Assembly: GCA_000708835.1 (NCBI GenBank)
Contig: DF237024.1
Location: 173,267-237,266 of the forward strand
Source: Klebsormidium nitens
Taxonomy: Eukaryota > Plantae > Klebsormidiophyceae
Direction of reading: 5' to 3'
Length of the DNA stretch: 64,000 nt
A model generated the notes under the pieces. That model was given only the letters and a program-made list of their open reading frames with translations. It ran no database searches and was not told the DNA's origin. The translations under genes were made by a program, and so were the position numbers. This document shows, in pieces, positions 23,973-64,000 of this stretch (positions are counted from its first letter, which is position 1; every line of letters begins with the position of its first letter).

Positions 23973-24168
23973 GGGTACCGTCATTTTAAANNNNNNNNNN
24001 NNNNNNNNNNNNNNNNNNNNNNNNNNNNNNNNNNNNNNNNNNNNNNNNNNNNNNNNNNNNNNNNNNNNNNNNNNNNNNNNNNNNNNNNNNNNNNNNNNNN
24101 NNNNNNNNNNNNNNNNNNNNNNNNAATCAGAATACCTACCCCGCTGCCACTTCAAAGTGACGGTACCC
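23973..24168. mobile_element. PIF/Harbinger (Tourist-like) MITE
   Basis: TIRs GGGTACCGTCA(T/C)TTT(A/G)AA at 23973-23990 and 24151-24168 are flanked by a direct TAA repeat (23970-23972, 24169-24171). The interior is largely N. Confidence 0.7.
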
Positions 24169-24316: not shown

Positions 24317-32001
<7,685 letters not shown>

Positions 32002-40822: not shown

Positions 40823-40842
40823 TGACGTAACTGCTGACGTCA
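40823..40842 (+). promoter_or_regulatory. as-1/ocs-type element (copy A)
   Basis: TGACGTAA-ctgc-TGACGTCA: two TGACG octamers with the canonical 4-bp spacer. Confidence 0.6.
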
Positions 40843-43223: not shown

Positions 43224-45515
43224 TCAAGGGTCGCGCGTCCCAAACGAGCTGGCCCCAACCTGTGCTTCGCTTGCCGTGATCTCGTTGAGAACTTTGGCCC
43301 ACCGGTCCTTTATACCAGGAAGATGCACAAACGTCCTTACCACCTCCGGGTCCTCCATCAATCGCGACAGCAGAAACGTACCCATCCGCTGCATCCCCTC
43401 TACCAGCCGCATCAGTTTCTCGAGACACCCGGGAACGGCGGCTATTACCTTTCTGTTCTCGGGCGCCTCAGCCAGACAAGTCAGGACGGACACCAAGCGT
43501 CGGTTCACCGACGCTCTGTTCAGAGTCACCGTGGGGAGGTTCTCGTCCAAGGGCCCCACTCCGTCCAACGCAGCAACTAGGCGCGACACGAGGGCCGGCT
43601 CCCTCGCCATTGTCACCCGGATGGAGGACAGCGCAGCTGCGTCTGTAATCTTCTCCGCGAAGTAGAGGAGGATCTCAGCGGCCGCGCTTGCCTTGCCCCC
43701 GTCGCGACAGTAGGCGGGGAAGTCCAATAGCCCCACGAGCCCCGTAATGCAGCCAGGCAAGCGAGCGATCGCCTCCGCTTCGCCGCCCAACTTGACCAAC
43801 TGAAGCAGAACGGTCACCGCCATCAGTTGGTCCCAGCTCTCGCCGCTACTCAAAACGCTGACGAGTACCGGGAGACTCCCATCGATACCGCCTAGAGCCT
43901 TGCACGCCTCAGCATCGGCCACCAAAGCCGCCAACACACTCAGAGTTTCCCCCGCGGCGCCTCTGGAGAGCGCACTTCTGACTTGCCCAACTAATCCCTC
44001 CAGAAACCTTGGCAGGGCAACCATTGCCCGAGGCTCCGTCTCCACAAGACGCTGGAACAGCTGCAGAGCGGCCTGCCCCGAGTGCCGCTCCTTGCGCATC
44101 ATCACCGGTAACTGCTCCTCTAAGAATCTTTCGACGGCTTTCACGGCCGTGCCGTTCTCTCCATCCTAGCGGAGCCGCAGCAACAGCCTCACAGCCAGTA
44201 TCTGCTGGTTGACGCGCTTCCGAGTGTTGAGGAAAGCTGCCAGCTTCTTAAGATTCACCCGAGACCTGGCCAAAGCTTGTCTAACTTGCGCCACGTCAGT
44301 CAGATGCAGCAGGATGAACTCCAAATGATCCAAGCCGTCCATTGTATCAAAAGCGGACAACAGATATCCCAGCATCCCAGGTGTTCTGCCAACAACGCTT
44401 GCAACTTCTAACTCCAACGTCAGCTTCTCAAGCAGTAAGAGAGCAACGGGGCCTTCCGCCCAATGGTCCGAGGACACCCTAAGCTGCGCCAGGCACCCCG
44501 GCACGTCCGCAATAGCCCTCCGGTTCGCAGGCAAACCAGCCAGGTTGCTCAACAGCCTCAGCGCGGTCATCCGTCTCCTTATAATCGGTATGCTGCTACC
44601 TCCGCACGTGGTGAGCTCTACCAGCGTCCGCAAACCGTGTGGCACTAGCACGATCGCTTTCCGCGCGGCGCCGTCGATCTCGGTCATCCTCCCAAGCGTG
44701 CACAAGATCCACTCCAGTCTGGTGCTGGACGTCTCAGCGTCCGCGCTGCGCAGATAGCCCAGCAGCATACGCAGGCTCCTTGGAACAGTGACCGTTTCGG
44801 GGGACAGAACGTCGAGCCCCTCTTGCATAGTCCCCCACCAGTAGGCCTTTTTGAGGGAGCTCAAATGGAGATCCTTGTACGCGAAAGGCTCGTCGTAATA
44901 GTGAAGCTCCAGGTTTTCAAGAGCTGGAAACACCTCCGAGAAGGTCTTGAGGTAATCTGGTGGAACGGTAAATCCAAAGAGGGTTAAGGACTGGAGCACA
45001 GGGAAGGACTCCAGGGGTTTCGCAAAGTAGAAGTCAACGGGTGGGTCCTCTGGTTGGGCAGCTTCCCACAATCTGATGTGCAAGACTGTCAGCCTTTGGC
45101 ATCGCTGGAGAATTGACAGGACGCTGTGCCAGTCTACCTGGTCTGCCGGGTCTGCATCGTCCAGATACAGATGGACCTCCTCTAAGCTATTGAGAGGAGC
45201 AGGAAGGAGTGCTTGGAGAATGGCCCGCAGACTTGTAGGAGAATGTATGTGAAGAGCCAACTTTCTCAAAGCAACGGCATCCTCCCTTCTGCTTAAGGCT
45301 TGTCTAAACCCCTGCTCATCTATAGGATTGTTAATTTCTAAGTCCACTCCCTCCAAAGAAGGAAGCAAGCGTTTGAATCTCCTGCACACCACTCCCAAGT
45401 GCCGCTTCTTCCGCACTGAGTCAAAGTCGAGAGGGCTCCACAAAACTCTGTCCAGGACGTTCCTGACCAGCTCGTCAGGCAGCCTCTCAAACAGATCTAC
45501 ACCGGCAGGCTCCAT
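43224..45515 (-). pseudogene. Intronless F-box / LRR-like / ARM-like repeat gene, copy A-minus, with an in-frame TAG at 44166-44168
   Basis: N-terminal F-box-like LFERLPDELVRNVLDRVL...LGVVCRRF, LxxLxL repeats (FPVLQSLTLFGF, FPALENLELH) and helical repeats (GCITGLVGLLD, GCLEKLMRLV). ORFs 44166-45527 and 43224-44144 are in the same frame and together align to the 60350-62669 paralog. Confidence 0.8.
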
Positions 45516-45937
45516 TCTGCAAGCCACAAGGCTATGCAGGCTACAGCGCCAATTGCTTGCACAATATTAATGAACATTGCCACCACTGGCACCAGCCTCA
45601 GGCTGACTACCGTAATCAGGTCCCATGCCGCTGCGCCAGGAAGTTCTAAGCGGATTTCACCCCACAAAAACTAAATAAATTTCAAGGGATCCCGCGAAGC
45701 GCTCGCGTCGTCACTGTGACACTGTGACTGAGCAGACCGTTTGCATACTGCTGGCAGTGCTGGAGCTATCTAGAGCCTAGCTTGCTCGACAAGACTCGAA
45801 TTTGTCAAAAGCCCGTCAAAGTCTGACGTCAAAGTTCAATGACAAAGATCCTGTTTCAAAGAAATTTGAAGTCGGAGAACTTGAGAGCTGTTCATCCAAG
45901 ACGAAAGTACCTAGTTGTGTTAAGAGCAGCTGCCAGC

Positions 45938-47812
45938 ATGGAGCCCGCCACCAGTAACCCATTCGAGCGGTTGCCCGAGGACCTGGTCAGAAACATCCTG
46001 GAGCGCGCCCCTTCGAGTTTGGCGTCATGAAAGCGAAGAGGAAGTTTCATCTGGGGATGCTCTGCAAGCAGTTCTGGGAGGCGCTCCCTGCTTTGGAAAT
46101 TCTCGAATGGGAGATCGACAATGCTGATGCTGAGCAGGACTTCCTGCAATCTATGAGAGATAAGAGGGAGGGGCTCCAGTTGAAGCGGCTGGCTCTCAAT
46201 GTGGCGCACCCTAGCAAAATGCAGGGGATTCTCCAGGCCGTTACTCCCCCTGCCCGAGAAACGCTAGAGGAGGTCTACCTCTTTCTGGGTGACAAAGATG
46301 AGGAAGCTTGGGCGGACTGGCATAGCATTCTGTCCCTGCTCCAGGAGTGCAAAACCCTGGAAGTCCTTCACTTAGCCATCTGGGCGGCCGCTTCCCCTAC
46401 TTCTGGCAAGCGTGTCCTCTGGCAGTCGGATCAGATTCCTCCCAAACCCTTCCCGGCCTTGCGATCCCTCACTCTGTTTGGCTTCTCCTTCATGGGCGAC
46501 ATTGGTACTCTCCTTCAATGCTTCCCTTTGCTAGAGAGCCTAGAGCTTTTCCATCTAGAAGGCCAAAACTACAATTTGGGCTCCACACCCCTCAAAAAGT
46601 TCTATTCATGGGGAAGGGGCGACTTGGGTTTTGACGTAAGAAGTCAGGCATTGGCGAGGGTCCCATCGAGTCTAGCGATGCTTCCCGGCTTCTTGCGCAG
46701 TGCCAGCTTCGCGAAGGTATGCACGCGCACGGATGGGATTCTAAAGATGCTCAGAATGTTGTCTCGTGAGGCAGCATGTCGAACTCTGCTTGGAAAGTTG
46801 CCAGATAGTGCCGAGATGTTGGTGGGCTTTTCCTGCTGCGGGGAGGTCTCCGCTGGAAGAAGATCAGATGCACTGCAAACTCTCGACAATCTGGCTTTCT
46901 CACCGGAGGTGGCGAGACTCATCGCTCACGTACCAGGGGCCCTCGCGCAGCTAGGGGCCCTTCTGAATAACAGCACGAGGACTGTGGAAACGAAGGTAAT
47001 TGCAATAAGGTTGCTCGCCAAGCTGACTCAAAGCGACGAAGTTAGGGAGATTGCCGGGGACATGCCATGGCTTCTGGATGATTTAGTGACTGCGTTAGCC
47101 GTTGACCTCATTCCGGAAAGGGTTGCCGAGGTTCTGCTTGAACTTTGTACAGCAGCAAGGGGTCAGGGAGGCACTTGCGAAATCTGGGTTTACTCTTGAG
47201 AAGTTGGCCAGCTTTCTGAGTATGGAAAGCTCCATCAAAGTGCAGGCGGCAGCAGCAAGCATTCTGTTGCAGCTGAAGGTGGACGGCACAAAGGGGTCTG
47301 CGATGGGCAGAGTTGAGACATATTTGCAGCAGCAGTTGGACTTGATGGTGAATGGAAACGGGCTCTCCCAGTGGACCGCGCTGAAGCTGGTTGGGGCCCT
47401 TCTAACAGCTCATAGAAAGGCTTGGGCTGATGTGCCAGGACTTTTGGAGGCGTTGGTTGCAGTTCTGAAATTTCCACCCCACCTGCAGCAGGTGGGGGCG
47501 GTTGCCTTACTGCAAGTGACGCACGATGGTGAGGCTCGTATAGCGATAGCGAAAGTTCCTGGGGTGTTCCATAACCTGCTCGCGGGGCTAGACTGTTTGG
47601 CTTGTCTCAGGGTTCTGCACCGGCTGGCGCAAGATGAGGGGAACTTGTGCACAATCAAGGACACTCCCGGGTGTGTAGAAGAGGTGGAGGCGTTGCTGGA
47701 CGAGGGCGGGGTCGATGCCCTTGACAGAGGGTTGCATTCGCAGAATGAGAGGGAAGAGCTCCGAACGTTTTTGACTGAGTTCGTAGCAACTGACGGTGCT
47801 GTTGCCGAGTAA
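45938..47812 (+). pseudogene. Intronless F-box / LRR-like / ARM-like repeat gene, copy A-plus, two frameshifts
   Basis: Starts MEPATSNPFERLPEDLVRNILER. A 10-nt deletion after 46007 relative to the 63537 paralog and a second frame change near 47148 join ORFs 45839-46030, 46027-47199 and 47102-47812. Confidence 0.8.
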
Positions 47813-50800
47813 GAGCTCATGCACATGATGTAGAGTCCTGAAATATGCTGAAACCTAACGAAGACGTGGGAGCTTCCGATTTGATGTGGCTTTTGAAAGG
47901 TCGTCCCTGTTGCTGCAATAGTTTGGAGGCGAGCTAGACATAACGGAGCAGGGGGTTTAGAAGAGCCAGGGACGAGTGGTGCAGCTAGAAACGCTGTGCC
48001 AAAGCTTACTGCAATAGCCAAGACTCCGCCAACCACAGTCAGGATTCCGGAAATGGCGATTCAGAGAGTAACAGAAGCTGGACGCGGTTTGTTCGGGGCC
48101 AGCGAAGTGCCGGAACGGGTGGTGGCTTTTGAAAAAGCCAGACGGTGCCTGTTGCGGAGCAAAATCATCCAGGGTAAAGAGTAAGAAGCACGAAACCGAG
48201 AGCAGATAATAAGAGGGGCGAACACGGCTCCCGCAACGAGGGCCCGGCAAGGAGGGGGGCAGCGGAATAGGGCGTATGAGGGGGGGCGGAAAATCCAGGT
48301 ACGTGTAAGAGAGACCCGGAAGTGATTGCAGGGTAGAGTGTGAGAGCCGTTAAGAACTTCGAAAATGAAGCGAGCTCTTGGAGCGAATCTTTGTCTATCA
48401 GCCTTGTCTTGCTCTATTGACCCTTTAGCAGGACCCTTTGTTGCCAGATCGATCACAATCTTTTCAGTTCCTTTCGACGCCCTCTGCCTTCTGATACGGT
48501 CTCATATGCCAGGTGTCTATCACGTGACGGATAATGAGAGAGCATCAGAGCTGCTCAGTGGTTGCTTCTTCAGCTCTGTGTTCGGTTTTACTGGACGAAC
48601 ACTGCTGGCTCAAGAGAGGATGCCAGCAGATATTCGTGGTTGATTGGTTCTTTAGGCACGTTTATTAAGTTAGTTGCAGCATGGTTCAGTGTGCCTCGTT
48701 TTGCTTCTGCACTTTGCTGTTGGAACAACCGACCGGCTCGCGTCTCTTCGACCACTTGTCCAACCATCAGTTCGACACTAAAACAACCCGGACGTTCTTC
48801 TTCCTCAGACGAGCAGGAACACAGACTTGACGAGATCAACATCATAGCGCAAACCTGGGGACAGAGCTTGGAGCGCGAAAAGAATTGCCTCGCAAGCAGA
48901 CACGTGGCAGCTCGGGGCGACGACGCTGGGATAGATAGAAGCTTTGGAAGAGGTAAGGTCCCGACCAGTTCTTGTTCGGAGAACGTACGAGTTCCCCTGT
49001 CTGTCTCTTTGTCCCTGATCATGCGGAGCCTCAAGAAAGGGTGGAAAACAGAGTGAGATGGTCAATCCCTATGCATCAAGCATCGTGCTTCGAAGCTTGG
49101 AAGTAGTCCGATTCAAACCACTCAGTCGCCTGCTCGCTTGCCTCTTTGCCGTGTGCAAGTGGCCTTGGAAGAGGAGCCTGTCGATATTCGTCGGGGCGTT
49201 GATAAAGCAAAGCGCCGACAATCAGCCGTTCTCATCTGTTGCCGCAACCAAAGGGCGCCCGCCCGTTGCTTTGCTTGGCAGCGGTTTTGATTGGGTCTCG
49301 AGTCCAATCACGAGAACCGGCTTCAAAGCTCACGAGTCAATCGGCGGTGCAATTCATTTTTCAGGGCGAGAAGCATGAGCGACGACACCGATGCATCCTG
49401 CCACCGGGAAGATGAGGCGACCACAACGCGGCCACGCTCGCTTACGGGTCGCCGAGACACGACGTCCATTCACAACGTTCGAGAGGGCCGGTGCTGCTTG
49501 GGCAAGTAGGTTTCTGTTCATGATTCAGTATTTTGCGGTATTTACTGCCGGAGGCTGGCCAAGGCTGTAAGTATGATGTGGCTGATCCTGCAGAGGACTG
49601 CAATCGACGTCGTAGTACGGATGGGCGTGTCCATCTTCGTGGAAAGTGCCGTCGACGTTTTGCGTTTTGTGCTTTGAGAGACCGGGCCTTATAAGGCAAT
49701 AGGCATACAATTAGACTTGGAGGATGTTCCAGCCCCGCAGAATGTCCCTCAGAGTTAGAGGTCCGTACACGCCGGCCCTTGAAGTCTGCGGCTCAAAAGT
49801 GATGCCGCCTCGGTTCCCCTCCTCGGGCGGACTCAGCGCTGAAACTGGCCTAGCCCGTGATCCACGGCCAGCGATCGGAACCCCTCATGCATCTTGTATC
49901 CGGCATTCGAGAAACACTTTTGGGGCTTCCTGTGTTTCAGTACCTTAAACCGGCTTGTAGTCGCGTGGGGCTTCGACACATGTAAGGTACAGAACGTGTA
50001 AGTCCATCGTCCGTTTCATCTCTGGTTCCGATCACAGCGCGCCTCACCAGCAATCGGACTTTCTCCAGGTCGGACTCTCGAGGGCTGCGAATCCGGCTCG
50101 GGTCATGATATCGGCGGGAGGGGTGGAGGGGCGAAAGTGCACGAGAACGGAATCTGCACTCGTTTCGCTGCAAGCTTAGGACTCCGGTCCTGCAGCGCTT
50201 TGCGCAGGCGGAAGCCGGTTTGAGAGGCGGAATGCGGCCGGAAGGCGCGAAAGCGAGGTGAGCAATCTCTTAAAAAGAGCGCCAACTCTACGAAGCGACC
50301 CTGTCTCGGAGCAAGGTTCTCTCAAGGGTACGGTTTGTGGGGACCGCACTGGCTCTGGTCGCAATCCTCCGCCGTGATCGTTTTGTTTTCCGTATCTTTA
50401 CTCTCGCTCTTTCCTTTTGCGACTCTTGACTTTGATGTCACACACTGACCGGGCAAAAGCGCAGGCAAATTAAAGGTTCTGGACACCTCCGAATGGGAAG
50501 AGAGAGCCGAGCGGAAAAGATCTGGCCGTTGACCTTTTTAGATTGCTTTGAAACCTGTGCCGACTGATTGCCATGTAGAGAGGGTGCTCATTGAAATGTT
50601 TGCAAACTGCTGCGCGGACTTCCCATTCGAGACGGGCCGTTTTTCCCCCATGTCAAACCGTAAACTGTAGTGCCCAGGGCTCTTGAATTGGAAACAGTTT
50701 CTGTGTAGGCCCATTTCGGATTGTTCTGACTTTGTATTGGTCACACCCAGACGACGACTGAGTTCGTAGCATCTGACGGCAGCATCAGTGATTTGCATAC

Positions 50801-53605
50801 GAGGCAACCACAGCATATTGTCCTGGTACATCTACCGCTTCGGCTAGCACTTCGGGTTCTCAGATAGTGCGGCGCTCGTGGCAACAGGTGTGGCCAGCTT
50901 GATCTTGTCGTGATGATCTACGTTAACGTTATGACCTACATACGTTGGGCTCTCTCTGCAGGGCGCGTTACATCGTCATGCACACGATTCCACCCGTGCG
51001 TATGCAGCTTCGGCCCCCAACACCAGACCCACGTGGCGCCACTTTGACGCAGCATGTCGCAGGTTTTGGAGCTCAGTAAGTGGGCGTCCTCTTGCTCAAG
51101 TTGAAATACTGGCCTACAGAATGCCAATGGTATCTTGTCTGGGCGGTAAGCCTGTTGACGTTTTGGAGCTTTTGTGTTATTTGGGTTGCGTCATTTCGTC
51201 TGCGAAACCTTTTGGCAGAGATTATTGGGAGGTCTAGCTTGCACTCGTTTTTGATTATAACAACATGAATCGTCCTCTGACGGTAAGGTGACTCATATAA
51301 TCTGTGAAGCGTGACGATTAACTATCTGGCAACTTCGACGTCGGTGGCTTCCGTCGATTGTGACGAGTACAACAACACAAAGGCTCCGCGCTCTGAAGTT
51401 CAACGATTTTTATATCCCAACAATCCGAACTGGCGGTCAAAATCACCCGTCCGAGTCTGTGCTGGTACAAGCCATTCTACGTACCTTCGAGGTTGCAAAT
51501 CTGTATCAAACAGGATTGTTAAGAAGCTTTATTCCCTAACCAGCTCCTTGACTGTTGTAGAACCCGGTGCTTTCCTTGCATCCCCGACCAGACCTCCGGT
51601 TCTACAGTTTGTACGCTCCACAGTATCCGGGTCGTAGCATCTTGGGAGCTTTGTCCGACTCCCAATCCGAACATGAATCCGAAGTATGAGTCATTGTTCC
51701 GAATCCAATTTCTCACCCAAGTCTGATTACCAAACTGCTTTTGTTCAGGCACGGGGCGGCGCCACTGGCGGCTCCGCCCGGGGTGACTCCCCGGTTGGCG
51801 ACAGCTGCGCTCACCCGTTTGGTCGGCTTGGGACGCGACCCTTACCGACCTCAGAGCAGCAGACGGGGGCGGGGCGAGATCCCCCACAAGGGCGCCGCCC
51901 GGGAAGCTCGACGGACATTGGGGCTCACGTCAGCAGGGACGTCAGCAGCCACCTCAGCCTGACGTCTTGGTGGGAGGCTCTGAGGCACGGGGTCTCGGTC
52001 GAACAGGGACCGAGGGCGCGGCGCGAAGCGATGCTGTCGAGAGATATGACGCGTAGGGGAAGCTTGGCCTGGAGTAGTTCCCTGGATAGGACACGTGGCA
52101 ATGACTTTGGCGGTTGCGAGAGGTGAGGCCCACGTGGCGCTCTGGGATTGAAGATTTGGAGGAGCGAAAATGACTTGGAAGGCGGCGGTAATTGACTAGC
52201 ACGAGAAGCGCAGGACAGGTTTGGTTGATAAACTGACGTCAAGCTTTGTCAATGTCTAGACTGGTTATAATATCTTGCTAAAGGTGGAGAATTTAAAGCA
52301 CTCGTCTTCGTTGAAGTCTGGTTCGAGCATGTACGCTGTTTTTTAACACCGTCTCCGCTTGCTCGGGGCGTTTTTGGGGGCATTTCGAAGATCCAATACC
52401 GTCTTTGAATGCATCCATATTATCCCAACCCGCTAATGTACAAAAGCAGATGAGATGTAACAGACGTGTCCTCGGTAGAGAGTACTTCACATCAACGCTG
52501 AAGCCAAGCTCGCTCTCACGGCGTCGTCCCAGATCATTTGGGTGCCGTGAAAGAAGTTTCCAAAGCAAGAATGCAGGCTACCTTGCGTTTGAAGACCATC
52601 AGCGCTTCCATTTGCGGACCCCTGAGCGGTTTATTTGCTGTTCCGGATCAGTCCCTGAGGCGGACTCCTTCTTGTACTGGCACCCATGCAGTCTGTAAAC
52701 TTCTTTCTTGCAGGTCGCCCATGTTACAAGCTGCCGCGCACGGGGCAATAGAACCGCGATAGCTACAGAAGCTGTTGACGTTTTTGAGATCTGTTGACTT
52801 CCGGCCTCAAAACAGTAAGAATATGTCTGCGAAGCGGGCTGTAGAAGTTCGCCCCGAGCATGTGTATGTACGCTTATAAGAGACTGATTATGGAGCCAGA
52901 GCCCTAGCTAATGCGTTCCTGAAGTATTATATAGCCTTGAGCCTTCTGTGCACAATGTAACCTGGACCATTGGAACTGCTTGCATGTTGGAACATGAACG
53001 GGCGAACTACGGCATGACCGAACAACAGAGGGATCTTGAACTCCTTTTGGATTGAAGGTTTCAGCGTCAAGCACGTACTTTAGCATTAGATGGAGCTTTG
53101 ATTAGCTATATACAAATATAGCATCAGCTTTAGTTTGAGATTGACCCGGGCAGTACGTCCGACCCATGCCCACGCCCCGCTAGCTGACGGTACGCATGAA
53201 AATTTGAAAGCTAGCGTGGGTCGATCGAGTCCGCCGTATACTGCCACTACATTATGATGGTTTCTTTCGGTATAGCCCCATAGCCCAGAGGGCGAAGAAA
53301 TAGTGTACATGTGGTTGGACGGATTTATCTACGGGTCCTCACCTAACGATCAAGCGTTCGATTCCTAGCAACAGCACCAACGTCAATTCATTGAACCATC
53401 GCCTATCAACTTTTTTATGACGTGCATGTTCAATGTATATATGAAGTTCTATATTGCTGAGAATCTGCACTAATCGCGTCAACGGGAGGGGAGGAAGAGG
53501 GCCTCCTACCCATGTACTATAGGGGGTGCTTCCGAAGAAGTCACAACCGGGCCGACTAAGTCAAAAGTACTGGCTCCCCCTCCACTCGTGATCAGCGGGA
53601 AGTTA

Positions 53606-53916
53606 ACATGGAGTTGGCATGGAGTAGTACAAGAAGATAGATTGTGCCAAGTCTGTAAGTGCAATCAAGTTGAGGACGAGGCTCACTTTTTGTTTCATTG
53701 TGAGGCATATCGAGATTTAAGGCTCCAATATAGACACCTTTTTCAAGCTAATGCTAGCCAGAACTTAGGAGACTTTCTCAATTTCAGAGAACAACTCTCC
53801 GTTGCTAAGTACATTCAATTGAGCACAAAGAGGAGGACAACAATAGTAGGCTAGCTTTGATAGGATAGTCCACTAGGCCAGTCGTGGCCCCGAACGGACT
53901 GTAAACAATCAATCAA
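53606..53916 (+). mobile_element. 5'-truncated non-LTR retrotransposon (LINE) 3' end
   Basis: DRLCQVCKCNQVEDEAHFLFHCEAYRDLR is the CxxC...EDExHxxxxC zinc-binding C-terminus typical of LINE ORF2. It is followed by a stop, a short 3' UTR with hairpin GGCCA-GTCG-TGGCC and a (CAAT)n-type tail at 53906-53916. Confidence 0.75.
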
Positions 53917-54100
53917 ACTAGGGGAGTTGACTACGGGCTAGGTCAGGGGCCGGCTGCTTGCTGAAGTCTTGGAGTGCTTGTTTTGCGCGCCACCAGTGCA
54001 TTGAGGGGCTGTAAGACAAATACATAGAAACAAAACATGCATTCGATTGTGTGCGCATGTACTATATTACAGCCAGACCATATATTGCACTGCTCATGAC

Positions 54101-54588
54101 AAGGGCTTTTGGGTTTACATTACGGTCTGATTACGGTCGCCGTAATTACTGTCGTAATTACGCCGTAGTTACGGTTGACCCCGTGTAACGCATTAAAATT
54201 ACGGTCGTTTCCTTACGGTGTCATGACGGTCTGAATTTTGCTTCACTAGTGGTAAGACGTAATTGTAAAGCGTAAAGCAAACTTTTGTCCGGTTAGAGCT
54301 CGGTTGTTGGAATCTCCTTTTACCAATATTATGCTTTTTAATCAATATTCCTGTAATCTGCACATATATTCTGTTGCGTTATGGCGGGATATGATACACA
54401 TTTGCCGTATATATGTTTTTTTTTCACTTGCGGTAATGCCTGTTAATAGTTGCCCTTTGCGTTACGTTTTCTTTGCTTTACCAGATTGGAGCTCAGACCG
54501 TAAAATGACGGCGTACCGTAAAGCAACCGTAATTTACGCCGTATTACATGACGGTCAGCCTCTGTTACGCCGTAAACCAAAACCCCTA
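54101..54588. mobile_element. hAT-like non-autonomous element (MITE) with subterminal TTACGG/CCGTAA repeats
   Basis: Imperfect TIRs (A/T)AGGG(C/G)TTTT(G)GGTTTAC. TTACGG-type motifs cluster at the left end (54120-54230) and CCGTAA-type motifs at the right end (54497-54575). No clean 8-bp TSD; a (CGGAGT)4 array abuts the right end. Confidence 0.6.
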
Positions 54589-54706
54589 CTCGGAGTCGGA
54601 GTCGGAGTCGGAGTCATGACTCAGTTCTCACCACGCCTTGAGTCCGTTGCAAGAACGTACCGTTAAAAACTCCTCGAGGGTCCATAGTGCATGGATAGTG
54701 CATGGA

Positions 54707-54760
54707 CTCATCGCCGCAGAGTTGATCCGATAACTCATCGCCGCAGAGTTGATCCGATAA
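54707..54760. repeat. 27-bp perfect tandem duplication
   Basis: actcatcgccgcagagttgatccgata occurs twice, preceded by an 11-bp gcatggatagt repeat. Confidence 0.8.
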
Positions 54761-57700
54761 CCTTCCCAAGTCGTTGCATGAAATATGCATATGACCGCGT
54801 ACGTCCAGGCTCGAGACGATTCGCGAATCGGGCGCGCGCGCCTGCTTTAAGCCTAGCGAACTTAAGTTAGAAGGCTCGTCACTTAGTCCAGACACTGGCA
54901 TATCGATCTCATATGCACTGACATGTCTCGTTGAAAACTAGAAATTGCCGCGATTGATACGTCATGAGCGGCTCATGACCATGACCGTTGCAAAGCTAGC
55001 TGAGCCCGGTAATTACATACAGCCTGTGCTTTTCCGAACGATATTCTTCGTGCATATAAGCAATGTGCAATTGATCAAACAATCGAGCGCGGCACAATTA
55101 ACATCATAGCCGTGACAACGGCGCTCTGACAGTTGCACTGCCACTGCGCAAGAACGACAGGCTTTTAGGTAAGATAAAGCGCAGTTCGAAGTAAGTAGCC
55201 TGCTTGTAGGACGTATCACACATGACGTTACAGTAAATCCTCATCGTTGACCATGCGGACCTCGAGACATGATCCCATTACTGCATGCAAAGTTAATGAC
55301 TGGCTGCCGGGTCCTTCTGCGGTCAGTCCGCAGGATCACACTCGATAATACCGCTTTTGAAACTCAAGAGCTAACCGAATGGCTTGATCGAGAAAGACTT
55401 TCCGGTGCAGTTCCGCTGAATTTTGCAGGGAATCATCCACGATCTTCTATTATGACGAGATGACGAATGTCCAGACACGCCCAATCAAATTCCTGTTCTT
55501 GAGAAGGTGCACACTGACTAATAAACTCCGCGGATTTTGACAGCCGGCAGTGCCGACGGTTCCCACCTCGATATATTTTATGGACGACTCCTGCTTCTTT
55601 GCGACAAGAGGGCTTTGTCAGGCCGTCCACAGGAAAGTTTAACTGAGGCTTCCGTATCAGTCCCGCAATCCTGCAAGTATTGAAAGGAGGCTTCCATGAA
55701 TATGGTGCTGTCGAATTGACAGGAATGAAGGGGTTGGAAAGATCGGCGGTCGCCAGAACTCCATACCAAAGGATTGAGATGGACACATTGGACAATTGGG
55801 CAAGGTCAAGAGCTCTATAATTTTCGGTGCACATTGTTGGTGTTCCGACTCATACCAACGATGATTAACATTCCATTAACGGTAGCCCACACAAACGTTG
55901 GAAGAAGAGCTGCCAATGAAGGTAACCATGTCGAGGGCTGAGTTGCGTAGTTCCGTGACGCTCTGTATTGGCGCCAGTTCTCCGTCGGAGAAAGAGCGCA
56001 AAACGAAACCCACGGAAGCAGATCAGAAAGCGTTCCGGGTCAGCATTCCGTCCGCCACGACGCTCGTCTGGAAACGGAGTGCCGGAATGGCAAATTGAGA
56101 CCTTCGCAACCGGAAGAAGAGGGCCCCCGGTGCTGAATTTGAATGGCTTCGGGGTCCGTCTTGAAGGCCCACTGACATAGGCACAGGACAGACTTCAGCA
56201 CGACCATTCTGACGTCATCGATTCGGTTGATATCGGTCCGGTTCGCGGAACGGCTCACCTGGAGAGTTGCGTTTGAACGGTGAGGATGGGCCAGACCCGC
56301 AGTCTCCGAGGGCGATGTTTTAGAGACCGACCTGTATCTTTCCAACAAACGAAGATACGGTCCGCCTGACACCCTGCACGTGAAAGCCTCGATATCAGTG
56401 CGTAGCGGCCTCTCTTCCTGTCTAGTTAGACGCAATCACGCTTGAAGAGGGCCCGAACATTAGTACCACTGACTGTCACAATGAATCATTTGACTTGAGC
56501 AGGTATCATGCTACCAAGAGCTTCGCCAAACGAGTCATATCTGCGCAGGCTGTCAACGTCACCGCATCAGCATTTCTTATCACAAATATGCTAGCAACCA
56601 GAAGATTGACACCTGGAAAGAGCTGCGTGCAGGCAACTGATTATGGCAGTGCACCAACAGAAAACCTCGAGGGAAGGCCTTGAGTTCGATGAAGCGCATG
56701 GTGCTTCTAAGATTGCCAGCGGTCTTGCGACTTTGTTCGTCTGGCATGCTCCTCAAAATCAGCCAACTAGAGACGTGGACAGGATCGTAGCGGATCTTAC
56801 AATGGATTTGACGCTCAAGATCAAACTTTAAACGGTTGTTTCGCGCCCTGTTGGTCCTCCGCAGCCCCGTCCCTTTCAAAGCTACGAGCGCCTTTGCCAC
56901 CCTCCGAGTTCCTGACAGAAAGAACGGATGACGTTAAATTCAATGCTTTGAGCTTGCCTTTCATCTGCGGTCATGCGCGTGCAGATGTGGACTCTGATCA
57001 TGCGCGTCGCCCAAACAATGAGAAGCCGAAGACGCCTCTTGTCAAGCGGACTGAAATACCTTGGTTGAAGAGTGTCGGTTGAAAACTCTCAGTTGAGCTT
57101 AGTGCATCCACTCTCCTACTCGGGCCTTTGAACAGCTACCAAGTGGCCTGACCACGTCCTGCTTATGTTGCAAATCGCAAGGGGTGTTGGCATCAAAAAA
57201 ACTTTTGCCAGGTAATTCGCAATCTGCTCATCGGCAGGGGGGGAAAGTTTCGAGAAGCCCGTACGTTGTGTCGAACGAAATTCCCAGAAGTCTTACACAC
57301 AAAGCTTTCTGGGATCAGCATTACGACGATCAAAACGTAGCCGAAACAAGACTTGTAATAGAGAAAGGGCAGGCAAATGAAGTAACAACTGGAGGGACAC
57401 CCAAAGGCAGCATTCGGACCTCCTTGATTGGGGCTGTCAGTCGACGGCTGCTTCTCTCGCCTGGTCAAAGGGGCGTGTTTCGGACACATCACAGGGCAGC
57501 TCCATTGAAGCGTTTGGGGCTCGATTGTCTCCACGGAAGCTGTGCAATCCTTGAGCTTCTTTCAGTCGCAGAGGTCCGTGTCGCTTTCTCGTCGCTTCCC
57601 GACTTACGGCCGATGCGTTGCAAGATTGCGCTGGATGCCTTGTTTCTCAGAGCAACAATTCATTCAGCTGCCACCCTCTCATAAGTATCCGATACAATCG

Positions 57701-57822
57701 CCACGTGTCATCTCCAGGATTTTAGAAAAGCTTGGCCGCGGAAGGGACCCACCTTCCGATCATCGCCGGGCAGCTCTTACGGCCCTGCTCTGCAACCTCC
57801 TCTGTACTGCACACAAGCGCAT

Positions 57823-57842
57823 TGACGTCGCTGCTGACGTCA
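57823..57842 (+). promoter_or_regulatory. as-1/ocs-type element (copy B)
   Basis: TGACGTCG-ctgc-TGACGTCA has the same spacer and homologous position as copy A. Confidence 0.55.
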
Positions 57843-60349
57843 GCTAGGCTGCCGGCGCTCCGTCCGTATGACACGTGGCTGCCCGCTGTCGGAGCGGGCC
57901 GCCTGTTGCCACGTCCACTGAAAGAATGTTATAAGCAATCAGACGAGCAGAGCTTGTACCGCGCCATATTGTACTTAAAGACTTTCCATGTGAGTTCGTT
58001 AGCGTGGGGTTGTGTTTCCATATTCATCGACGCGTTTACAGTACGGAGTGGCTACTAAATGTCAAAGTCGGAGCCACCAGCCGGAAAGCATTCAAATTCG
58101 GAAAAGGAAGCGTAAGAGGTACAATAACAACCCGACGAGACGCCCGGTTTTACACAGAAACCGCCGCGCTGCTCGTTCCGGCACCTCTGAGCTGCACCTT
58201 TTGGAAGCTTTGCTCTTAAGTTATCGACAAATCTTGACGGAGAGAGCTTTGTACCTCGAAACAAGAATTTCGCTGGCATTTGTAAGCCCAGGCGGATTGC
58301 ACGTTTTAGCGGGCAGAAAACGTCAGAGGCTCAGCTCGGAACAGTGTGATTGATGTTGCAAGTACTGACGTTGCTGGCTTCAAGTTGTATACAGCCAGCA
58401 TGCGGCGACCACTTCCAGCGAGACCCGAAGTGCCGAACCTAGCTATTTGCAGATGCGCACAGTTATCAAAAAATAAAGCCAGAGCCAGAGAGAAAATCAG
58501 TTCTTTAATCCGAATCGACGGTGATCGGCTTGACATCGATCGCTCTCACAAATCAGTGGTCAAGTCCTTTCGGTCGGTCTTCCGCTTCATTTCCATCTCA
58601 AATTATGTCAATCAGAGAACCTAACCATGAAACGTGAATGCTCACCACTGAGTCGGCTCACAGTGTGAGTCTCCGTCAACGATGCAGTCCGTGCTTCCAA
58701 GTGCAGCTTCCGGCGACCCCTTCTCCGGGCGTGCCAGTTCGTGGTCGCCGGACTTGTGGAGGGACGCTGCAAAAGGAAGTTCCCTCTCGGCGGCTCTGCA
58801 CACCCTGCACACCCTGGCCTCTGAACGAGAAAGAGCAGGGAAGGCACTGCAAAGCGCAAAGAAGGGGTCGTACTATTTTGGTGAAATGACGTCTTTCTCG
58901 GGTGATTGATCAAGGCTGAGCATCCCTAGCGACTTCTCATGGCTTCGCTACGAGCAGCGCTTTCTTTACAAGCAGACGGTTAAATCAGCTACAGAGTTCA
59001 ATATCCCTCAACCGACTTTCGAACCCGGACCAGTCATTTCGATGGCCAGACACAAAATGCCCAGGGTTCGAGGACTGCCGCTTTGGTCGCGGAAAGTTCG
59101 AGGAGAGACACTCTGGACTCGGTTCTCATTTGGACGAATCTTGGGCCGACTCAGCCACAAACGGACCCCGAACGGACAAAGCCACAACAGCAGTTTGTAT
59201 CTTGTCGCATTTTGCCAAAGCCCTTCCTTTTCATCTTAGTACGGAAGAAATAACATGACCACCTAAACAAACAGCTTGTAGACCTACCGGTTCAGCGGCT
59301 TCCCTTGTGACCCAAACTTTGTTGGCCCTGATCTGCCACCATGTCTGCTCCCAGATTGTCCTTCTGACCTGGCCCCTCCGAAGCCGACGTCGTACAGCTA
59401 CGTCAGCCCCGCAGCTGCACCATCCCCTCCGGTGTGTCTGCTGCGGGTCCCTTTCACTTCCTGGTAGGAGAAGGACCACAATCGTATCCGACTAGAAAAA
59501 TCAAGGGAGTCGACGCAAGGTGCCCCCGATTCGGTGTGCTCTGTTCGATACCCTTTGCTAAATCGAAACGAACTTGGGCAGGTTCTCCCTCAAAAGATAA
59601 AAGTCAGGGTTGGTTCGACAACACAAGCGGGAGAGGAGATGCTCGCCCAAAGGAGGGACGTCAACGAGGATGGACGAAGCAACACAGAGAAGCACCCTGT
59701 TTCTACGTATTATGCTGACCGTCAACTCGTCAGTGCACGCCCGCTGACAATGAGGCAATGAACGGCCTTCTCATGGATTGATTGAGTCAAGAAGCAAATT
59801 CCGTATCGATTTAGGTAGCGTCAATCATATCAGAGCGTGCCAGATTTAGCAGCGATAAACGCTGAAGGAGGCAGAAGCGATAACCACTGGAGGAGGCAGC
59901 CCTGCACGAATCCTTTCCTTATCACATGGCGATCGTAGCCCGAGGCACGGCATCGATGCACTATCTTAGAAGAGCAACAGGCGGCAAAGACGGACTTTCA
60001 GGATAGGGTGCAGATCGAAGGCCGCGAAAATGATAGATCGACAAAACGGCAGGCACGACTATTCCACTCGAGGCTAGGAAGACAGGTAACTGAAAAATTG
60101 TCAGAAACACCCTTAGACCAAAGGGCAAAGATGCCGCAAGCTCAATATAGACACGCACCTGAGCCTATATGCCCCTCTGGCGTACCCAGCTTTCGGTTGG
60201 CCGTTCGCTCTCACTTTCGTCTGCTGTGTGAGGGGTCACCTTTCCAGCCGCAGTGCTCCAAAACTCGTTCCGTTGCTTCCACCCCCAGCCCGCCCCCCGA
60301 CCCCGGCCCCCGCCCCTCCGCTTTTCCTTCGAGTCTTCAGACCTTCCGC

Positions 60350-62669
60350 TCAAGGATTGCGGATGTCCAACGAGCTGCCGTCAAACTTCACCCCACTCGC
60401 TATGATCTCATCCATGACTTTGGACACCCGGCCGCGAAAACCGGGAACCCGTCCAACTCTCCATGCCACCTCCGAATCTGCCATCAAACGGGACAACAGG
60501 AACGTGCCCATGCGCTGCATCTGGGGCGTCCCTTCAAAGAGACCCACCGCTTGGTCCAGGCAGCCAGGCACAGCCGCTATCAGTTTTCTATTCTTGGGCT
60601 CCTCAGCCAGGCAGATCAGCGCACACACCAAGCATTGATCTACCAACCCTTCGTTGACAGCCACCGTGGAGAGATCTTCTTCGAGAGGCCCGACTCCGCC
60701 CAACGCGTCGACCAGCCGCCATAAGAGGGCCCGCTCCCGCGCCATCGCCTTCCGGACCGAGGACACCGCCGCTTCGTCTGCAGGAGAAACACAGGAGCGT
60801 CTCGGCGGCCGCGACCGCCGCGCCCCCGTCGCGAGAGTAGGCAGGGATGTCCAACAGCCCTACGAGCGCGGGGATGCACCCGGGCAGGCGAGCGATCGCC
60901 TCCGCTTCGCCGCACGACTTGACCAACTGAAGCAGAACCGCTGCCGCCAGGTTGTGCTCCCAGGTCCCAAGGGTTCTCAGGACCTCGACAAGCGCCGGAA
61001 AGATCCCGTCCACTTTGCACACCGCCCTGCAGGCCTCAGCATCAGCAACCAGTCCCTCCAACACGCCCAGAGCATCCCCCGCCCATGGCCCCATGCCTTT
61101 TCCCAAGTTAGTACCTTCTATCAATGTCCCTACCAGTCCCTCCAAGAGCCCCGGCACAGCAAGCACTGCCTGAGGCTCCGTTTTTGCAAGTGCTTGGAAC
61201 AGCTTCAGAGCTGCCCTGCGCGGTAAAAATGCCGTCCCACTTCCCGTTCCAATCATCACCGCCACCTGTGCTCCTAAGAATCGCTCAACGGCCTTTATAG
61301 CCGCCCCCCTCTCTCCATCCCGCCGGAGCCGTAGCAACACCCTTACGGCCATTGTCTGCTGTTCGACGCAGACAAAGCGGGCTTCAAGAATACCTGCCAA
61401 CCTTTTAAGATTCACCCGCGATCTGGCTAGGGCTTGTCTAACTTGCGCCACTTCAGAGAGATGCAGCAGGGTGTGCCCCGCACAATCGAGGCTGTCGATT
61501 GGATCAAGGGAAGACAACAGGTGCCCTAGCATTCCCGGCATTCTGCCAACGATCTGTGCAACTCCTACATCCAACGTTAGCCTCGCAAGCACCGCCAGGG
61601 CAATTGGGCCTTCCCCCCAGTGTTCCGAACACACCTTGAGTCGCGCTAGGCACCCCGGCACGTCTCCGATAGCCCTCCGAGCCTCCGGCAACGCAGCCAA
61701 ATTGCGCAACAATCTTAAGGCAGTAATGCGTCTCCCGATTACCTCTATGCTGCTACCTGTACATGTGATAAAGTCTACCACCGTCTGCAAACCGTGTGGC
61801 AGCTGCGCGATCGCTTTTTGAACCGCGGCGTCCCACTGAGTCATCCTCTCGAGAGTGCCTAGGATCCAGCTTTTAACGGGGCTGGACGTTGCGATGTCCC
61901 CGCTGCGCAGATGGCCCGTTAGCATGGCCAAGCTCCTTGGGACAGTGACGAGCTCGGGAGACAGAATGTCCAGCCCCTCCCGCATAGTCCCCCACCAGTA
62001 GGCCTTCGTCAGGGAGCTAAACTCGAGATCGTATGGGGTTGGGCCGTCAGGGTGTTGGAGCTCCAGGCTTTGGAGAGCCGGGAAAGACTCAAGAAAGCTA
62101 TTGAGTTCCCTTGGGGGAACTGCAAACCCAAACATGGACAAGGATTGGAGCACAGGAAAAGACCCCGGACATCTGGAAAAGTCCAGGGCAAAAGGTGGGT
62201 CTTTCCATTGGGCAGCAGCCCACAGCGTAATGTGTAAGACTGTCAGCTTTTTGCATTGCTGGAGGGTTGAGATAACGCCGTGCCAATCTACTAGCTCTTC
62301 CGGGTCTGTATCTTCCAGATACAGGTAGACCTCCTCTAGCCTGTTCTCAGTAGCAGAAAAGACCGCTTTAAAGATGGCCCCTAGACTAGAAGGAGATTGT
62401 ATGTGAAGAGCCAACTTTCGTAAAGAGGAAGCAACTTCCCTTGTGGCTACGTACTCTTCAAACCTCTGCTCATCTTCAGCATTGTCGATCTGAAAGTCTG
62501 CGCACTCAACAGAAGGTATATTGCACCTGAACCTCTTGCACACCACTCCCAAGAGGCGCTTCTTCCGCAGCGAGTCACAGTCGAGAGGGGTCCACAGAAC
62601 TCTGTCCAGGACGTTCCTGACCAGCTCGTCAGGCAGCCTCTCAAATAGATCTACGCCTGCAGGCTCCAT
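60350..62669 (-). pseudogene. Intronless F-box / LRR-like / ARM-like repeat gene, copy B-minus, late frameshift near 60783
   Basis: The ORF from MEPAGVDLFERLPDEL stays open for ~630 codons. An apparent 8-nt deletion relative to copy A then shifts the homologous C-terminus into ORF 60350-60766. It could still make a near-full-length protein. Confidence 0.78.
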
Positions 62670-63536
62670 TCTGCAAGCCAGAAGCCTAAGGGGTATGCAG
62701 GCTGCAGCGCCTTGCTTTGCACAATTTGACATCAGACAATGGGAGCATACCCGGTAGTACTAGTAGAGTAGCGGCGCCGGTACCGCAGTTGCCCTGCAGT
62801 TGTTCTCAAAGGGGGCGTCCGATTTCAAAGCTCCGGAATTGCACACTCCGTGCATCTGAGTCTTTTTTCAACGGACCAGATTGCAACTTGGGCCAATCTG
62901 GGCCCCCATCACCGTAGATGTCCTTGGGGTGTCCATGCATGGCCTACCTAGAAACTTTACTGCAATGCAAAAACTTCTGCCACTGGCGCCGCACTGGTGC
63001 TAGTGCCTACAAACTTCTGCAGGATGATTGTAGAGAAGGGTGGCTTTGGGGAGGAGAGAGACGGTAGAAGCAGGTAAGTGTGGGGCTGCTGAAGCCGAGG
63101 CGCCCCTAATTTTCCTCCTGATTTGAACCGGTGTACCGTTTCTAAGCAAGATTACTACATGCTGTGCACAGTTCTTCAAGCTCGTCAAGTTGATGATGGC
63201 GAAAATTAAAACGGGTTTTCCTGAAACCCTCCGTCGCAAAGGGGTCGGGGAATCAGCAAAAACGTACGGGGGTTTTCAGTAGCCAACTGCTCGGAATGAC
63301 CTAGTAACCAGGATCGATAAATCTGGTCAGGCTTTAGCAAACCATGTCGGTCCTTCAATCGACGTACGAGAACTGTCGAGTCGATGATGGCTTGACAAGC
63401 ACTGCTTCAAGTGCTTGGCAGCAGTCCGAGCAGAGTCATTGTCACAGCTGTCAGTCAATGACAAGGAAGAGGGGAAGTTCATTCGGAGCTAGAGTCGACA
63501 GCCGCACAAAAGTGTCACTGTATAGCTGAGGACAGC

Positions 63537-64000
63537 ATGGCACCCGGGACCATCAACCTGTTTGAGCGACTGCCCGAAGACCTGGTCAGAAACATCCTGG
63601 AGCGCGTCCTGTGGCGCCCCTTTGAGTTTGGCATTACAAAGTCAAGGAGGAAGGTTTATCTGGGGTTGCTCTGCAAGCAGTTTCGGGCAGCAATTGCTGC
63701 TCTGGAAAGCCTTGAGTGGGAAATTCATAATGCAGAGGACGAGCAAAAATTCCTGCACTTTTTGCGCGGAAGGGAAGAGGGGCTCTCGCTGAAGCGGCTA
63801 TCTATCAATGTGGCGCACGTGTGCAGAGTGCGGCAAGGGATTCTGGAGGCCGTTACTCTTGTCGCCCGAGAAACGCTAGAAGAGGTTTGCCTATTCCTAG
63901 GTGACAAAGATGAGGCAGTGTGGGAGGACTGGCCTAGCACTCTGTCCCTTCTTCAGGAGTGCAAGAACCTGAAAGTCCTTCATGTTGCCTTATGGGCTGC
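63537..64000 (+). CDS. F-box / LRR-like gene, copy B-plus (5' part, runs off the window)
   Basis: Hand translation MAPGTINLFERLPEDLVRNILERVLWRPFEFGITKSRRKVYLGLLCKQF...LEEVCLFLGDKDEAVWEDWPSTLSLLQECKNLKVLHVALWA is open to the window end and colinear with 45938-46390. Confidence 0.82.
   Translation, partial: MAPGTINLFERLPEDLVRNILERVLWRPFEFGITKSRRKVYLGLLCKQFRAAIAALESLEWEIHNAEDEQKFLHFLRGREEGLSLKRLSINVAHVCRVRQGILEAVTLVARETLEEVCLFLGDKDEAVWEDWPSTLSLLQECKNLKVLHVALWA

What the first reader, a model, noticed from the sequence alone, without database searches (positions are those of the whole stretch)
43224..64000. Duplicated head-to-head pairs of intronless F-box-LRR-ARM genes: a candidate paired ubiquitin-ligase receptor system
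Seen: a divergent pair (43224-45515 minus / 45938-47812 plus, ATGs ~420 bp apart) is repeated ~17 kb downstream (60350-62669 minus / 63537-> plus, ATGs ~870 bp apart). The two partners are themselves distant paralogs and are intronless, whereas every neighbouring protein-coding gene model has introns. Established: F-box+LRR+ARM is the ARABIDILLO architecture, but I recognise no ARABIDILLO-specific motif. Head-to-head pairing is how plant sensor/helper NLRs (RPS4/RRS1, RGA4/RGA5, Pik-1/Pik-2) are arranged. Inference: a lineage-specific family of co-regulated SCF substrate receptors that spreads as a two-gene unit, possibly for defence or stress-triggered degradation. I know of no description of such a system.
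Basis: partly seen in the sequence, partly recalled or inferred. Interest (0 to 1): 0.78.

Follow-up and report, generated by a model that had tools for sequence, protein, structure and literature searches.

The report
Duplicated, decaying F-box gene pair
The alga Klebsormidium nitens carries two copies of a back-to-back pair of related F-box/LRR/armadillo genes from a family seen so far only in this alga and unnamed look-alikes. At least three of the four copies are broken and nothing shows the partners work together, so this is ordinary gene-family turnover.

Summary
The window is K. nitens scaffold KFL_00075. A head-to-head pair, A (43224-45515, minus) and B (45938-47812, plus), recurs 17 kb downstream as A' (60350-62669, minus) and B' (63537 onward, plus). 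The copied block is at least 6 kb.

- **Single duplication event:** dS is about 0.70 for A/A' and 0.75 for B/B'.
- **Two types:** A-type and B-type copies form two sister clades, each with 100/100 support.
- **Architecture:** fold searches support an F-box + LRR + armadillo layout like ARABIDILLO. N-terminal relatives that carry a name are all K. nitens; no direct comparison with an ARABIDILLO protein was possible.
- **Lesions:** A has an in-frame TAG, A' an 8-nt deletion, and B a 10-nt deletion in the F-box plus a 1-nt insertion. B' seems to stop at codon 156. Public gene models hide these lesions with an intron or a late start.
- **Selection:** dN/dS of 0.24-0.37 means the genes coded for proteins until recently.
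- **No sign of coupling:** the two spacers do not align, and nine other annotated members show no adjacent relative among the proteins I retrieved.

Verdict: a private F-box subfamily undergoing birth and death; the pairing reflects how it was duplicated.

The parts
43224..45515 (-). Gene A (A-type F-box/LRR/ARM; public model KFL_000750340). It is one reading frame of 763 codons with a single in-frame TAG at 44166-44168.
   Evidence: Translation. tblastn of the intact relative P0001 covers residues 1-751 in one frame. P0002 is identical to A apart from the skipped 40 codons. TAG position.
44073..44192 (-). The 120-nt 'intron' of the public model of A (GTGAGG...GGGCAG). It removes the TAG and 40 codons that are coding in A' and in P0001.
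45516..45937 (.). Spacer of pair 1 (422 bp). It holds one TGACGTCA at 45824-45831.
   Evidence: It cannot be aligned to spacer 2.
45938..47812 (+). Gene B (B-type; public model KFL_000750350 is a truncated version). It is collinear with the intact 632-aa relative P0007 but lies in three frames. A 10-nt deletion at 46007/46008 inside the F-box and one extra base at 47158 cause the shifts.
60350..62669 (-). Gene A' (A-type copy; no public protein model was found). An 8-nt deletion relative to A near 60782 shifts the frame. The last roughly 143 codons remain open in the other frame.
62670..63536 (.). Spacer of pair 2 (867 bp). It has no TGACGTCA.
63537..64000 (+). Gene B' (B-type copy). Its first 154 codons are intact and the window end cuts it. 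A 155-aa ORF call from the same 237-kb scaffold (P0021) matches it exactly and ends one codon past the window, which suggests a premature stop.
40779..43223 (.). Non-coding flank downstream of A that belongs to the copied block. Its counterpart is 57779-60349. The best-kept patches are 40779-41000 and 42237-42431.
   Evidence: tblastx shows similar conservation in all six frames, so the flank is not protein-coding.
57779..60349 (.). The same non-coding flank in copy 2.

Best explanation
These are two copies of a head-to-head pair of paralogous single-exon genes. Each encodes an N-terminal F-box-like helical motif, about seven leucine-rich repeats and a long armadillo solenoid. The likely role (inferred) is a substrate receptor of an SCF ubiquitin ligase: the F-box docks on SKP1 and the ARM/LRR surface binds targets.

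The family is known by name only from Klebsormidium. It has the ARABIDILLO architecture but is not the conserved ARABIDILLO orthologue.

History (shown): an old inverted duplication produced the A and B types. Later a block of at least 6 kb, holding both genes and 2.4 kb of flank, was copied 17 kb away.

The copies then evolved under relaxed purifying selection, so they made proteins for most of that time. In the sequenced strain A, A' and B carry ORF-breaking mutations, and B' probably does too. The locus is therefore in the death phase of the birth-and-death turnover typical of lineage-specific F-box genes.

The head-to-head layout is inherited duplication geometry. It is not evidence of a two-protein machine.
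For: - **Identity:** the window is K. nitens scaffold KFL_00075.
- **Copied block:**
- **Equal age of both partners:** A/A' dS 0.70 (bootstrap 0.60-0.85) and B/B' dS 0.745 (0.50-1.16).
- **Selection:** dN/dS 0.37 (0.30-0.44) for A/A' and 0.235 (0.15-0.39) for B/B'.
- **Lesions:**. P0021 ends at 155 aa.
- **Public models dodge the lesions:**
- **Tree:** A clade 100/100, B clade 100/100, A+B sister 96/92.
- **Fold of the whole protein:** AF2 model of the intact A-type relative has pLDDT 87.5, with helices 8-53, beta/alpha repeats 56-226 and helical repeats 247-750.
- **ARM part:** beta-catenin and Vac8 are among the top Foldseek hits. The family profile hits PDB ARM proteins at E 1e-53 to 1e-23.
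- **N-terminal part:** the A' N-terminal model gives FBXL2, FBXL17, D3, TIR1 and Skp2 as top hits. Alignments start at their F-boxes; Z 10.6-11.7.
- **Pfam:** LRR_At5g56370 is at or above cutoff in A' and P0001.
- **Restricted range:** in 1.84 billion representatives, only about 35 share the N-terminal part. All 11 with a name are K. nitens.
- **Spacers:** not conserved.
- **General pattern:** lineage-specific plant FBX genes with relaxed selection and many pseudogenes are described in PMC3030570.
Against: - Each copy has only one or two lesions, and dN/dS is well below 1, so the inactivation is very recent or not real.
- The scaffold is a draft with N gaps. The 1-nt insertion in B lies in a short homopolymer context.
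- The TAG in A sits inside a 120-nt segment with GT...AG ends, which could be spliced out in frame.
- Both partner types were kept through dS of about 0.7 in both copies.
- A second adjacent pair, KFL_000110430/440, seems to be adjacent in a related alga as well. Some selective value of adjacency is therefore not excluded.
- No expression data could be consulted.
Confidence: 0.7

Rival explanations
1. A and B form a functional two-component SCF receptor module. They are co-regulated from the shared spacer, spread as a unit, and act in defence or stress-triggered degradation like paired sensor/helper NLRs.
For: - The head-to-head layout is kept in both copies, and the pair was copied as one unit.
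- A and B types form separate clades.
- Both types were under purifying selection.
- All four copies appear to have been hit at about the same time, which could reflect shared dispensability.
- A second adjacent pair of family members exists on scaffold 11.
Against: - The spacers cannot be aligned and share no motif.
- Three or four of the four genes are broken.
- The annotated long B-type paralogue KFL_012100020 has no annotated A-type partner. No A-type protein other than KFL_000750340 was found in K. nitens.
- There is no integrated decoy, no NB-ARC and no other defence domain.
- Only one unit-duplication event is seen here.
Confidence: 0.07
2. The genes are still functional. On this view the lesions are assembly errors or are tolerated. 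A would be rescued by splicing out the 120-nt segment that holds the TAG, which is roughly one ARM repeat (a recent 'intronization'). A' would make a protein lacking its last repeats. B would make an F-box-less protein from an internal start.
For: - The skipped segment has GT...AG ends and a length divisible by three.
- Each gene has only 1-2 lesions, and dN/dS is 0.24-0.37.
- The assembly is a draft with gaps.
- The extra base at 47158 lies in CAAGGGG.
Against: - The skipped segment is ordinary coding sequence in A' and P0001 and has no polypyrimidine tract.
- Deletions of 8 and 10 nt and a TAG that differs at two bases from the CGG of A' are not typical sequencing errors.
- The B deletion removes part of the F-box itself.
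- A' has no public protein model at all.
Confidence: 0.2
3. The copies are gene fragments captured and moved by a transposon, and were never functional host genes.
For: - The genes are intronless in an intron-rich neighbourhood.
- The block was copied together with flanking non-coding DNA.
Against: - The genes are full length and collinear with intact relatives.
- dN/dS is far below 1.
- The only inverted repeats are the two F-box coding regions themselves.
- Pfam found no transposase or reverse-transcriptase domain in the flanking ORFs tested.
Confidence: 0.03

Closest known systems
ARABIDILLO / PHYSCODILLO (plant F-box + LRR + Armadillo proteins)
   Same: The domain order is the same: N-terminal F-box, then leucine-rich repeats, then armadillo repeats. 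The protein-atlas feature search puts ARABIDILLO-type clusters nearest, at score 0.91 with 173-174 shared features. That result is a lead only.
   Different: ARABIDILLOs are described as highly conserved from charophytes to flowering plants (PMC4982054). This family evolves fast: 58-65% identity between copies, and 27% to the next subclade. Its N-terminal part found no named relative outside K. nitens among 1.84 billion representatives. In A, A' and B the ARM repeats fall below Pfam's Arm threshold. No ARABIDILLO sequence could be compared directly.
FBXL-type F-box/LRR receptors (FBXL2, FBXL17, Skp2, TIR1, D3/MAX2)
   Same: They are the best structural matches of the N-terminal 260 residues. 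The alignments begin at the F-box of SKP1-bound proteins, with Z 10.6-11.7 and 169-209 aligned residues.
   Different: Sequence identity is 11-16%. Pfam F-box scores are below cutoff. Generic LRR proteins score almost as high, at Z about 10. The C-terminal ARM solenoid is absent from FBXL proteins.
Lineage-specific plant FBX genes under 'genomic drift' (Hua et al. 2011, PMC3030570)
   Same: This locus shows relaxed purifying selection, local duplication, many pseudogenes and a narrow taxonomic range.
   Different: That work covered land plants and Chlamydomonas, not Klebsormidium. It did not describe a head-to-head pair copied as a unit.
Paired plant NLRs (RPS4/RRS1, RGA4/RGA5, Pik-1/Pik-2)
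   Same: The genes are head to head, the partners come from two clades, and the pair was duplicated as a unit.
   Different: There is no NB-ARC, no integrated decoy and no conserved shared promoter, and the copies are broken. The comparison with NLR pairs rests on general knowledge, not on a test made here.
ZYG11/ZER1 (LRR + ARM substrate receptors of CUL2 ligases)
   Same: Both are LRR-then-ARM receptor designs. They are the second set of atlas neighbours, at score 0.84.
   Different: The score is below the trust level. They use a different cullin-docking box and are animal proteins. No homology was shown.

Membership tests
F-box superfamily (SCF substrate receptors) | An N-terminal F-box motif of about 45 residues, recognisable by sequence | tested here: inconclusive
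   Pfam F-box (cutoff 20.5 bits) scores 12.2 bits in A and 17.7 in P0001. Pfam F-box-like (cutoff 24.3) scores 20.6 in P0004 and 17.0 in P0006. All are below cutoff. The LPxxL...VCKRF pattern is conserved across the family.
F-box superfamily (SCF substrate receptors) | A three-helix F-box fold that leads into the LRR domain, as in SKP1-bound structures | tested here: met
   The AF2 model of the A' N-terminus has pLDDT 79.9. Foldseek top hits are Dia2, D3 and Skp2, with FBXL2 and TIR1 just below. VIA-align gives FBXL2 Z 11.7 (model 6-243 on chain 9-266), FBXL17 Z 11.5-11.6 and TIR1 Z 10.8. The margin over generic LRR proteins is small.
F-box superfamily (SCF substrate receptors) | Binds SKP1 and assembles with a cullin | not testable with these tools
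   This needs yeast two-hybrid or co-IP with K. nitens SKP1.
FBD-type F-box LRR (Pfam PF24758 LRR_At5g56370) | Score at or above the gathering cutoff of 27 bits | tested here: met
   Above cutoff: A' 32.0, P0001 27.5, P0004 28.3, P0012 27.3 bits. Below cutoff: A 26.1 and B 22.2 bits.
Armadillo-repeat proteins | Tandem ARM repeats forming a right-handed helical solenoid | tested here: met
   The family profile against PDB hits designed ARM proteins, Vac8, beta-catenin and importin-alpha at E 1e-53 to 1e-23. Foldseek of the P0001 model hits beta-catenin and Vac8 at E about 1e-8 to 1e-7. Pfam Arm is above cutoff in P0006, P0010, P0004, P0009 and P0012 but not in A, A' or B.
ARABIDILLO family | F-box + LRR + ARM domain order | tested here: met
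ARABIDILLO family | Orthology, meaning high sequence conservation with land-plant ARABIDILLOs | tested here: inconclusive
   No named land-plant protein matched the N-terminal part among the best 150 of 692 profile hits. All 11 named N-terminal matches are K. nitens. The atlas puts ARABIDILLO-type clusters nearest at 0.91. No ARABIDILLO sequence was available for direct alignment or for a tree.
Paired sensor/helper receptor genes | A head-to-head pair whose partners belong to two distinct clades and move together | tested here: met
   Only one duplication event was seen.
Paired sensor/helper receptor genes | Both partners kept intact, with a conserved shared regulatory region | tested here: not met
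   Lesions are present in A, A' and B and probably in B'. The spacers cannot be aligned.
Paired sensor/helper receptor genes | The partners depend on each other functionally or bind each other | not testable with these tools
   This needs genetics or interaction assays.

The most novel reading that the evidence does not exclude
The A-type and B-type proteins are obligate partners, for example a heterodimeric SCF receptor or a receptor with its regulator. They would be expressed from a bidirectional promoter. The pair would be the unit of selection and duplication in Klebsormidium, and the near-simultaneous loss of all four copies in this strain would reflect that interdependence.
Probability: 0.07. 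Interest if true: 0.6.

Novelty: new member of a known kind. Interest (0 to 1): 0.25.

Why it matters
The locus adds a documented example from a streptophyte alga of the rapid birth and death of lineage-specific F-box genes, a pattern known from land plants. It also shows that the ARABIDILLO-type design (F-box + LRR + ARM) has a fast-evolving, alga-restricted offshoot.

The practical value is for annotation. The public models KFL_000750340 and KFL_000750350 are built around ORF-breaking mutations, and A' has no model. All three should probably be flagged as pseudogenes or re-examined with RNA-seq.

The locus does not open a new mechanism.

Tried and rejected
The DNA around P0001, P0007, KFL_012100020 and KFL_000110430/440 could not be fetched, so gene orientation at other family loci is untested.
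- **Metagenome scans:** Scans with alignment A5 and with P0153 found nothing.
- **Word-indexed protein search:** it returned only 3-4 hits per query because ARM-type words saturate the candidate list. The family census therefore rests on the profile search of representatives plus cluster look-ups.
- **Looking for ARABIDILLO among ARM-only hits:** Pfam scans of eleven such hits found U-box/ARM, NB-ARC/ARM and HET/ARM proteins, but no F-box/ARM protein.
- **A third gene in the copied flank:** rejected. tblastx conservation is similar in all six frames.
- **A transposon origin:** rejected.
- **A conserved bidirectional promoter:** rejected. TGACGTCA is enriched across the whole window and is not specific to these spacers.
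- **Literature:** a search for the locus tags found nothing.
- **Scan notes looked up by sequence:** blank.
- **How broken genes were handled:** Broken genes were searched piece by piece, by reference. In scripts the pieces were joined only with NNN/X at the breaks, for the codon alignments and the tree.
Full report
**Source.** The window is part of Klebsormidium nitens scaffold KFL_00075 (237,266 bp).
- The protein KFL_000750340 (P0002) is identical to the translation of 43224-45515 (minus), apart from 40 skipped codons.
- KFL_000750350 (P0003) is a shortened version of the plus-strand gene at 45938-47812.
- The scaffold is a draft with N gaps at 6961-7710, 13165-13341 and 23991-24124.

**Observation.**
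- Gene A (43224-45515, minus) and gene B (45938-47812, plus) start 422 bp apart. Gene A' (60350-62669, minus) and gene B' (63537 to the window end, plus) start 867 bp apart.
- blastn aligns 43163-45565 with 60291-62725 at 72% and 45934-46388 with 63533-64000 at 75%.
- A more sensitive run shows one collinear block, 40779-45565 against 57779-62725. The copied unit therefore holds both genes plus 2.4 kb beyond the 3' end of A.
- That flank is conserved similarly in all six frames, so it is non-coding.
- The two spacers between the start codons do not align. They share only the few bases next to the ATG of A.

**Integrity of the four copies.** tblastn with an intact A-type relative (P0001, 751 aa) and an intact B-type relative (P0007, 632 aa) shows that all four genes are collinear with their relatives and have no introns. 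Three of them are nevertheless broken.
- **A** has an in-frame TAG at 44166-44168, where A' has CGG.
- **A'** lacks 8 nt near 60782. Its last roughly 143 codons continue in another frame, up to the stop codon that aligns with A's.
- **B** lacks 10 nt at 46007/46008, inside the F-box. This removes four residues and shifts the frame. It also has one extra base at 47158.
- **B'** is open for the 154 codons in the window. An unnamed 155-aa ORF call from the same scaffold (P0021) matches it exactly and ends one codon later. This suggests a premature stop just outside the window; that is an inference.

The public gene models avoid these lesions.
- The model of A has a 120-nt 'intron' (44073-44192, GTGAGG...GGGCAG). 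It removes the TAG together with 40 codons that are plainly coding in A' and P0001.
- The model of B starts at an internal Met after the deletion and skips about 550 nt around the second frameshift.
- A' has no public protein model of comparable length.

**What the genes encode.**
- Pfam gives LRR_At5g56370 (PF24758) above its 27-bit cutoff in A' (32.0 bits) and P0001 (27.5 bits), and just below it in A (26.1 bits). F-box and ARM hits are below cutoff.
- More conserved family members (KFL_000110440, KFL_002770130, P0004, P0009, P0012) have Arm (PF00514) well above cutoff.
- An AlphaFold model of P0001, built on a 29-sequence family alignment, has mean pLDDT 87.5. It shows short helices at 8-53, seven beta/alpha repeats at 56-226 and helical repeats at 247-750.
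- Foldseek matches the helical part to beta-catenin and Vac8. The family profile hits solved ARM proteins at E 1e-53 to 1e-23.
- The N-terminal 261 residues of A' were folded alone (pLDDT 79.9). They match F-box/LRR receptors best: Dia2, D3, Skp2, FBXL2 and TIR1 by Foldseek.
- By VIA-align the best matches are FBXL2 at Z 11.7, FBXL17 at Z 11.5-11.6 and TIR1 at Z 10.8. These alignments begin at the F-box of the SKP1-bound proteins. Generic LRR proteins score only slightly lower, so the F-box assignment is well supported but not proven.

**Family and range.**
- A profile search of 1.84 billion representative proteins gave 692 hits. Most match only the ARM part.
- About 35 representatives share the N-terminal F-box/LRR part. 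Every one that carries a name is K. nitens.
- The named members are KFL_000110440, 000750340, 000750350, 001390020, 002770130, 003470090, 003650010, 004190110, 007590090, 009400060 and 012100020.
- The remaining representatives are unnamed Logan, ENA or JGI sequences.
- The atlas feature search puts ARABIDILLO-type clusters nearest, at 0.91. ARABIDILLOs, however, are described as highly conserved from charophytes to angiosperms (PMC4982054). This family is fast-evolving and private.
- I therefore file it as a lineage-specific family with the ARABIDILLO architecture, not as ARABIDILLO.

**History.**
- A maximum-likelihood tree of the N-terminal 330 residues of 31 members gives an A clade (A, A', P0001; 100/100). 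It also gives a B clade (B, B', KFL_012100020, P0007; 100/100). The two clades are sisters (96/92).
- The pair therefore arose by an old inverted duplication of one gene. The only inverted repeats around the spacer are the two F-box coding regions.
- Synonymous divergence is 0.70 for A/A' (0.60-0.85) and 0.745 for B/B' (0.50-1.16). The two partners were thus copied in one event.
- dN/dS is 0.37 (0.30-0.44) for A/A' and 0.235 (0.15-0.39) for B/B'. This is relaxed but clear purifying selection.
- With only one or two lesions per gene, inactivation must be recent relative to the duplication.

**Is the pair a functional unit?** Evidence for:
- The arrangement survived in both copies.
- The two types form separate clades.
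- A second adjacent pair exists. KFL_000110430 and KFL_000110440 are 42% identical.
- Relatives about 70% identical to these two (P0012 and P0004) both lie on Logan contigs of 20,955 bp, probably the same contig.

Evidence against:
- There is no conserved spacer element.
- Three or four of the four genes are broken.
- The nine other annotated members lie on other scaffolds, and none has an adjacent locus tag among the relatives I retrieved.
- No A-type protein other than KFL_000750340 was found in K. nitens, so the long B-type paralogue KFL_012100020 has no annotated A-type partner.
- No defence-type domain is present.

**Verdict.** The proposed paired-receptor mechanism has no support.
- The best reading is ordinary birth-and-death turnover of a lineage-specific F-box subfamily, as described for plant FBX genes (PMC3030570). 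Confidence 0.7.
- The main rival is that some copies still work, either through assembly error or through in-frame splicing of the TAG-bearing segment. Confidence 0.2.
- The paired-module reading gets 0.07.
- This scan has already reported similar decaying head-to-head F-box pairs on other pieces of this genome (s1-267521, s1-277689), and an F-box/LRR/ARM cluster (s1-285592).

**Method note.** Broken genes were searched piece by piece, by reference. In scripts they were joined only with NNN/X at the breaks.

Noticed in passing
window 11722-57842 (13 sites; for example 40835, 45824, 57835): The perfect palindrome TGACGTCA occurs 13 times against 1.08 expected. The sites are spread over the whole window, so it looks like a general promoter element of this alga. 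Sites 40835 and 57835 are homologous positions in the conserved non-coding patch that opens the copied block. Compare scan note s1-285642.
   Followed up: partly
window 6961-7710, 13165-13341, 23991-24124: These are N-run assembly gaps. The segments 13092-13164 and 13344-13416 are 93% identical and flank the second gap. That looks like an assembly artefact and may bear on the 'splice-site echoes' note s1-353345.
   Followed up: no
K. nitens scaffold 11 (KFL_000110430 / KFL_000110440; not in the window): Two adjacent, apparently intact family members are 42% identical and have true Arm repeats. Relatives about 70% identical to them (P0012, P0004) both lie on Logan contigs of 20,955 bp, which suggests conserved adjacency in a related alga. 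Their orientation is unknown.
   Followed up: partly
window 44073-44192: The public model of KFL_000750340 contains a 120-nt GT...AG 'intron' that removes an in-frame TAG and 40 codons that are coding in paralogues. It is either an annotation artefact or a case of recent intronization.
   Followed up: partly
window 4382-4990 (+) and 36955-37515 (+): Two neighbouring genes show partial-domain ORFs: Sec62 (E 7.8e-08) and a Casparian-strip-membrane-protein-like domain (E 3.6e-13). This is consistent with intron-split housekeeping genes around the F-box cluster.
   Followed up: no
window 27228-27564 and 17823-18064: Short local direct repeats: 27236-27450 against 27351-27560 at 78%, and 17823-17884 against 18003-18064 at 84%. 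Their nature is unknown.
   Followed up: no
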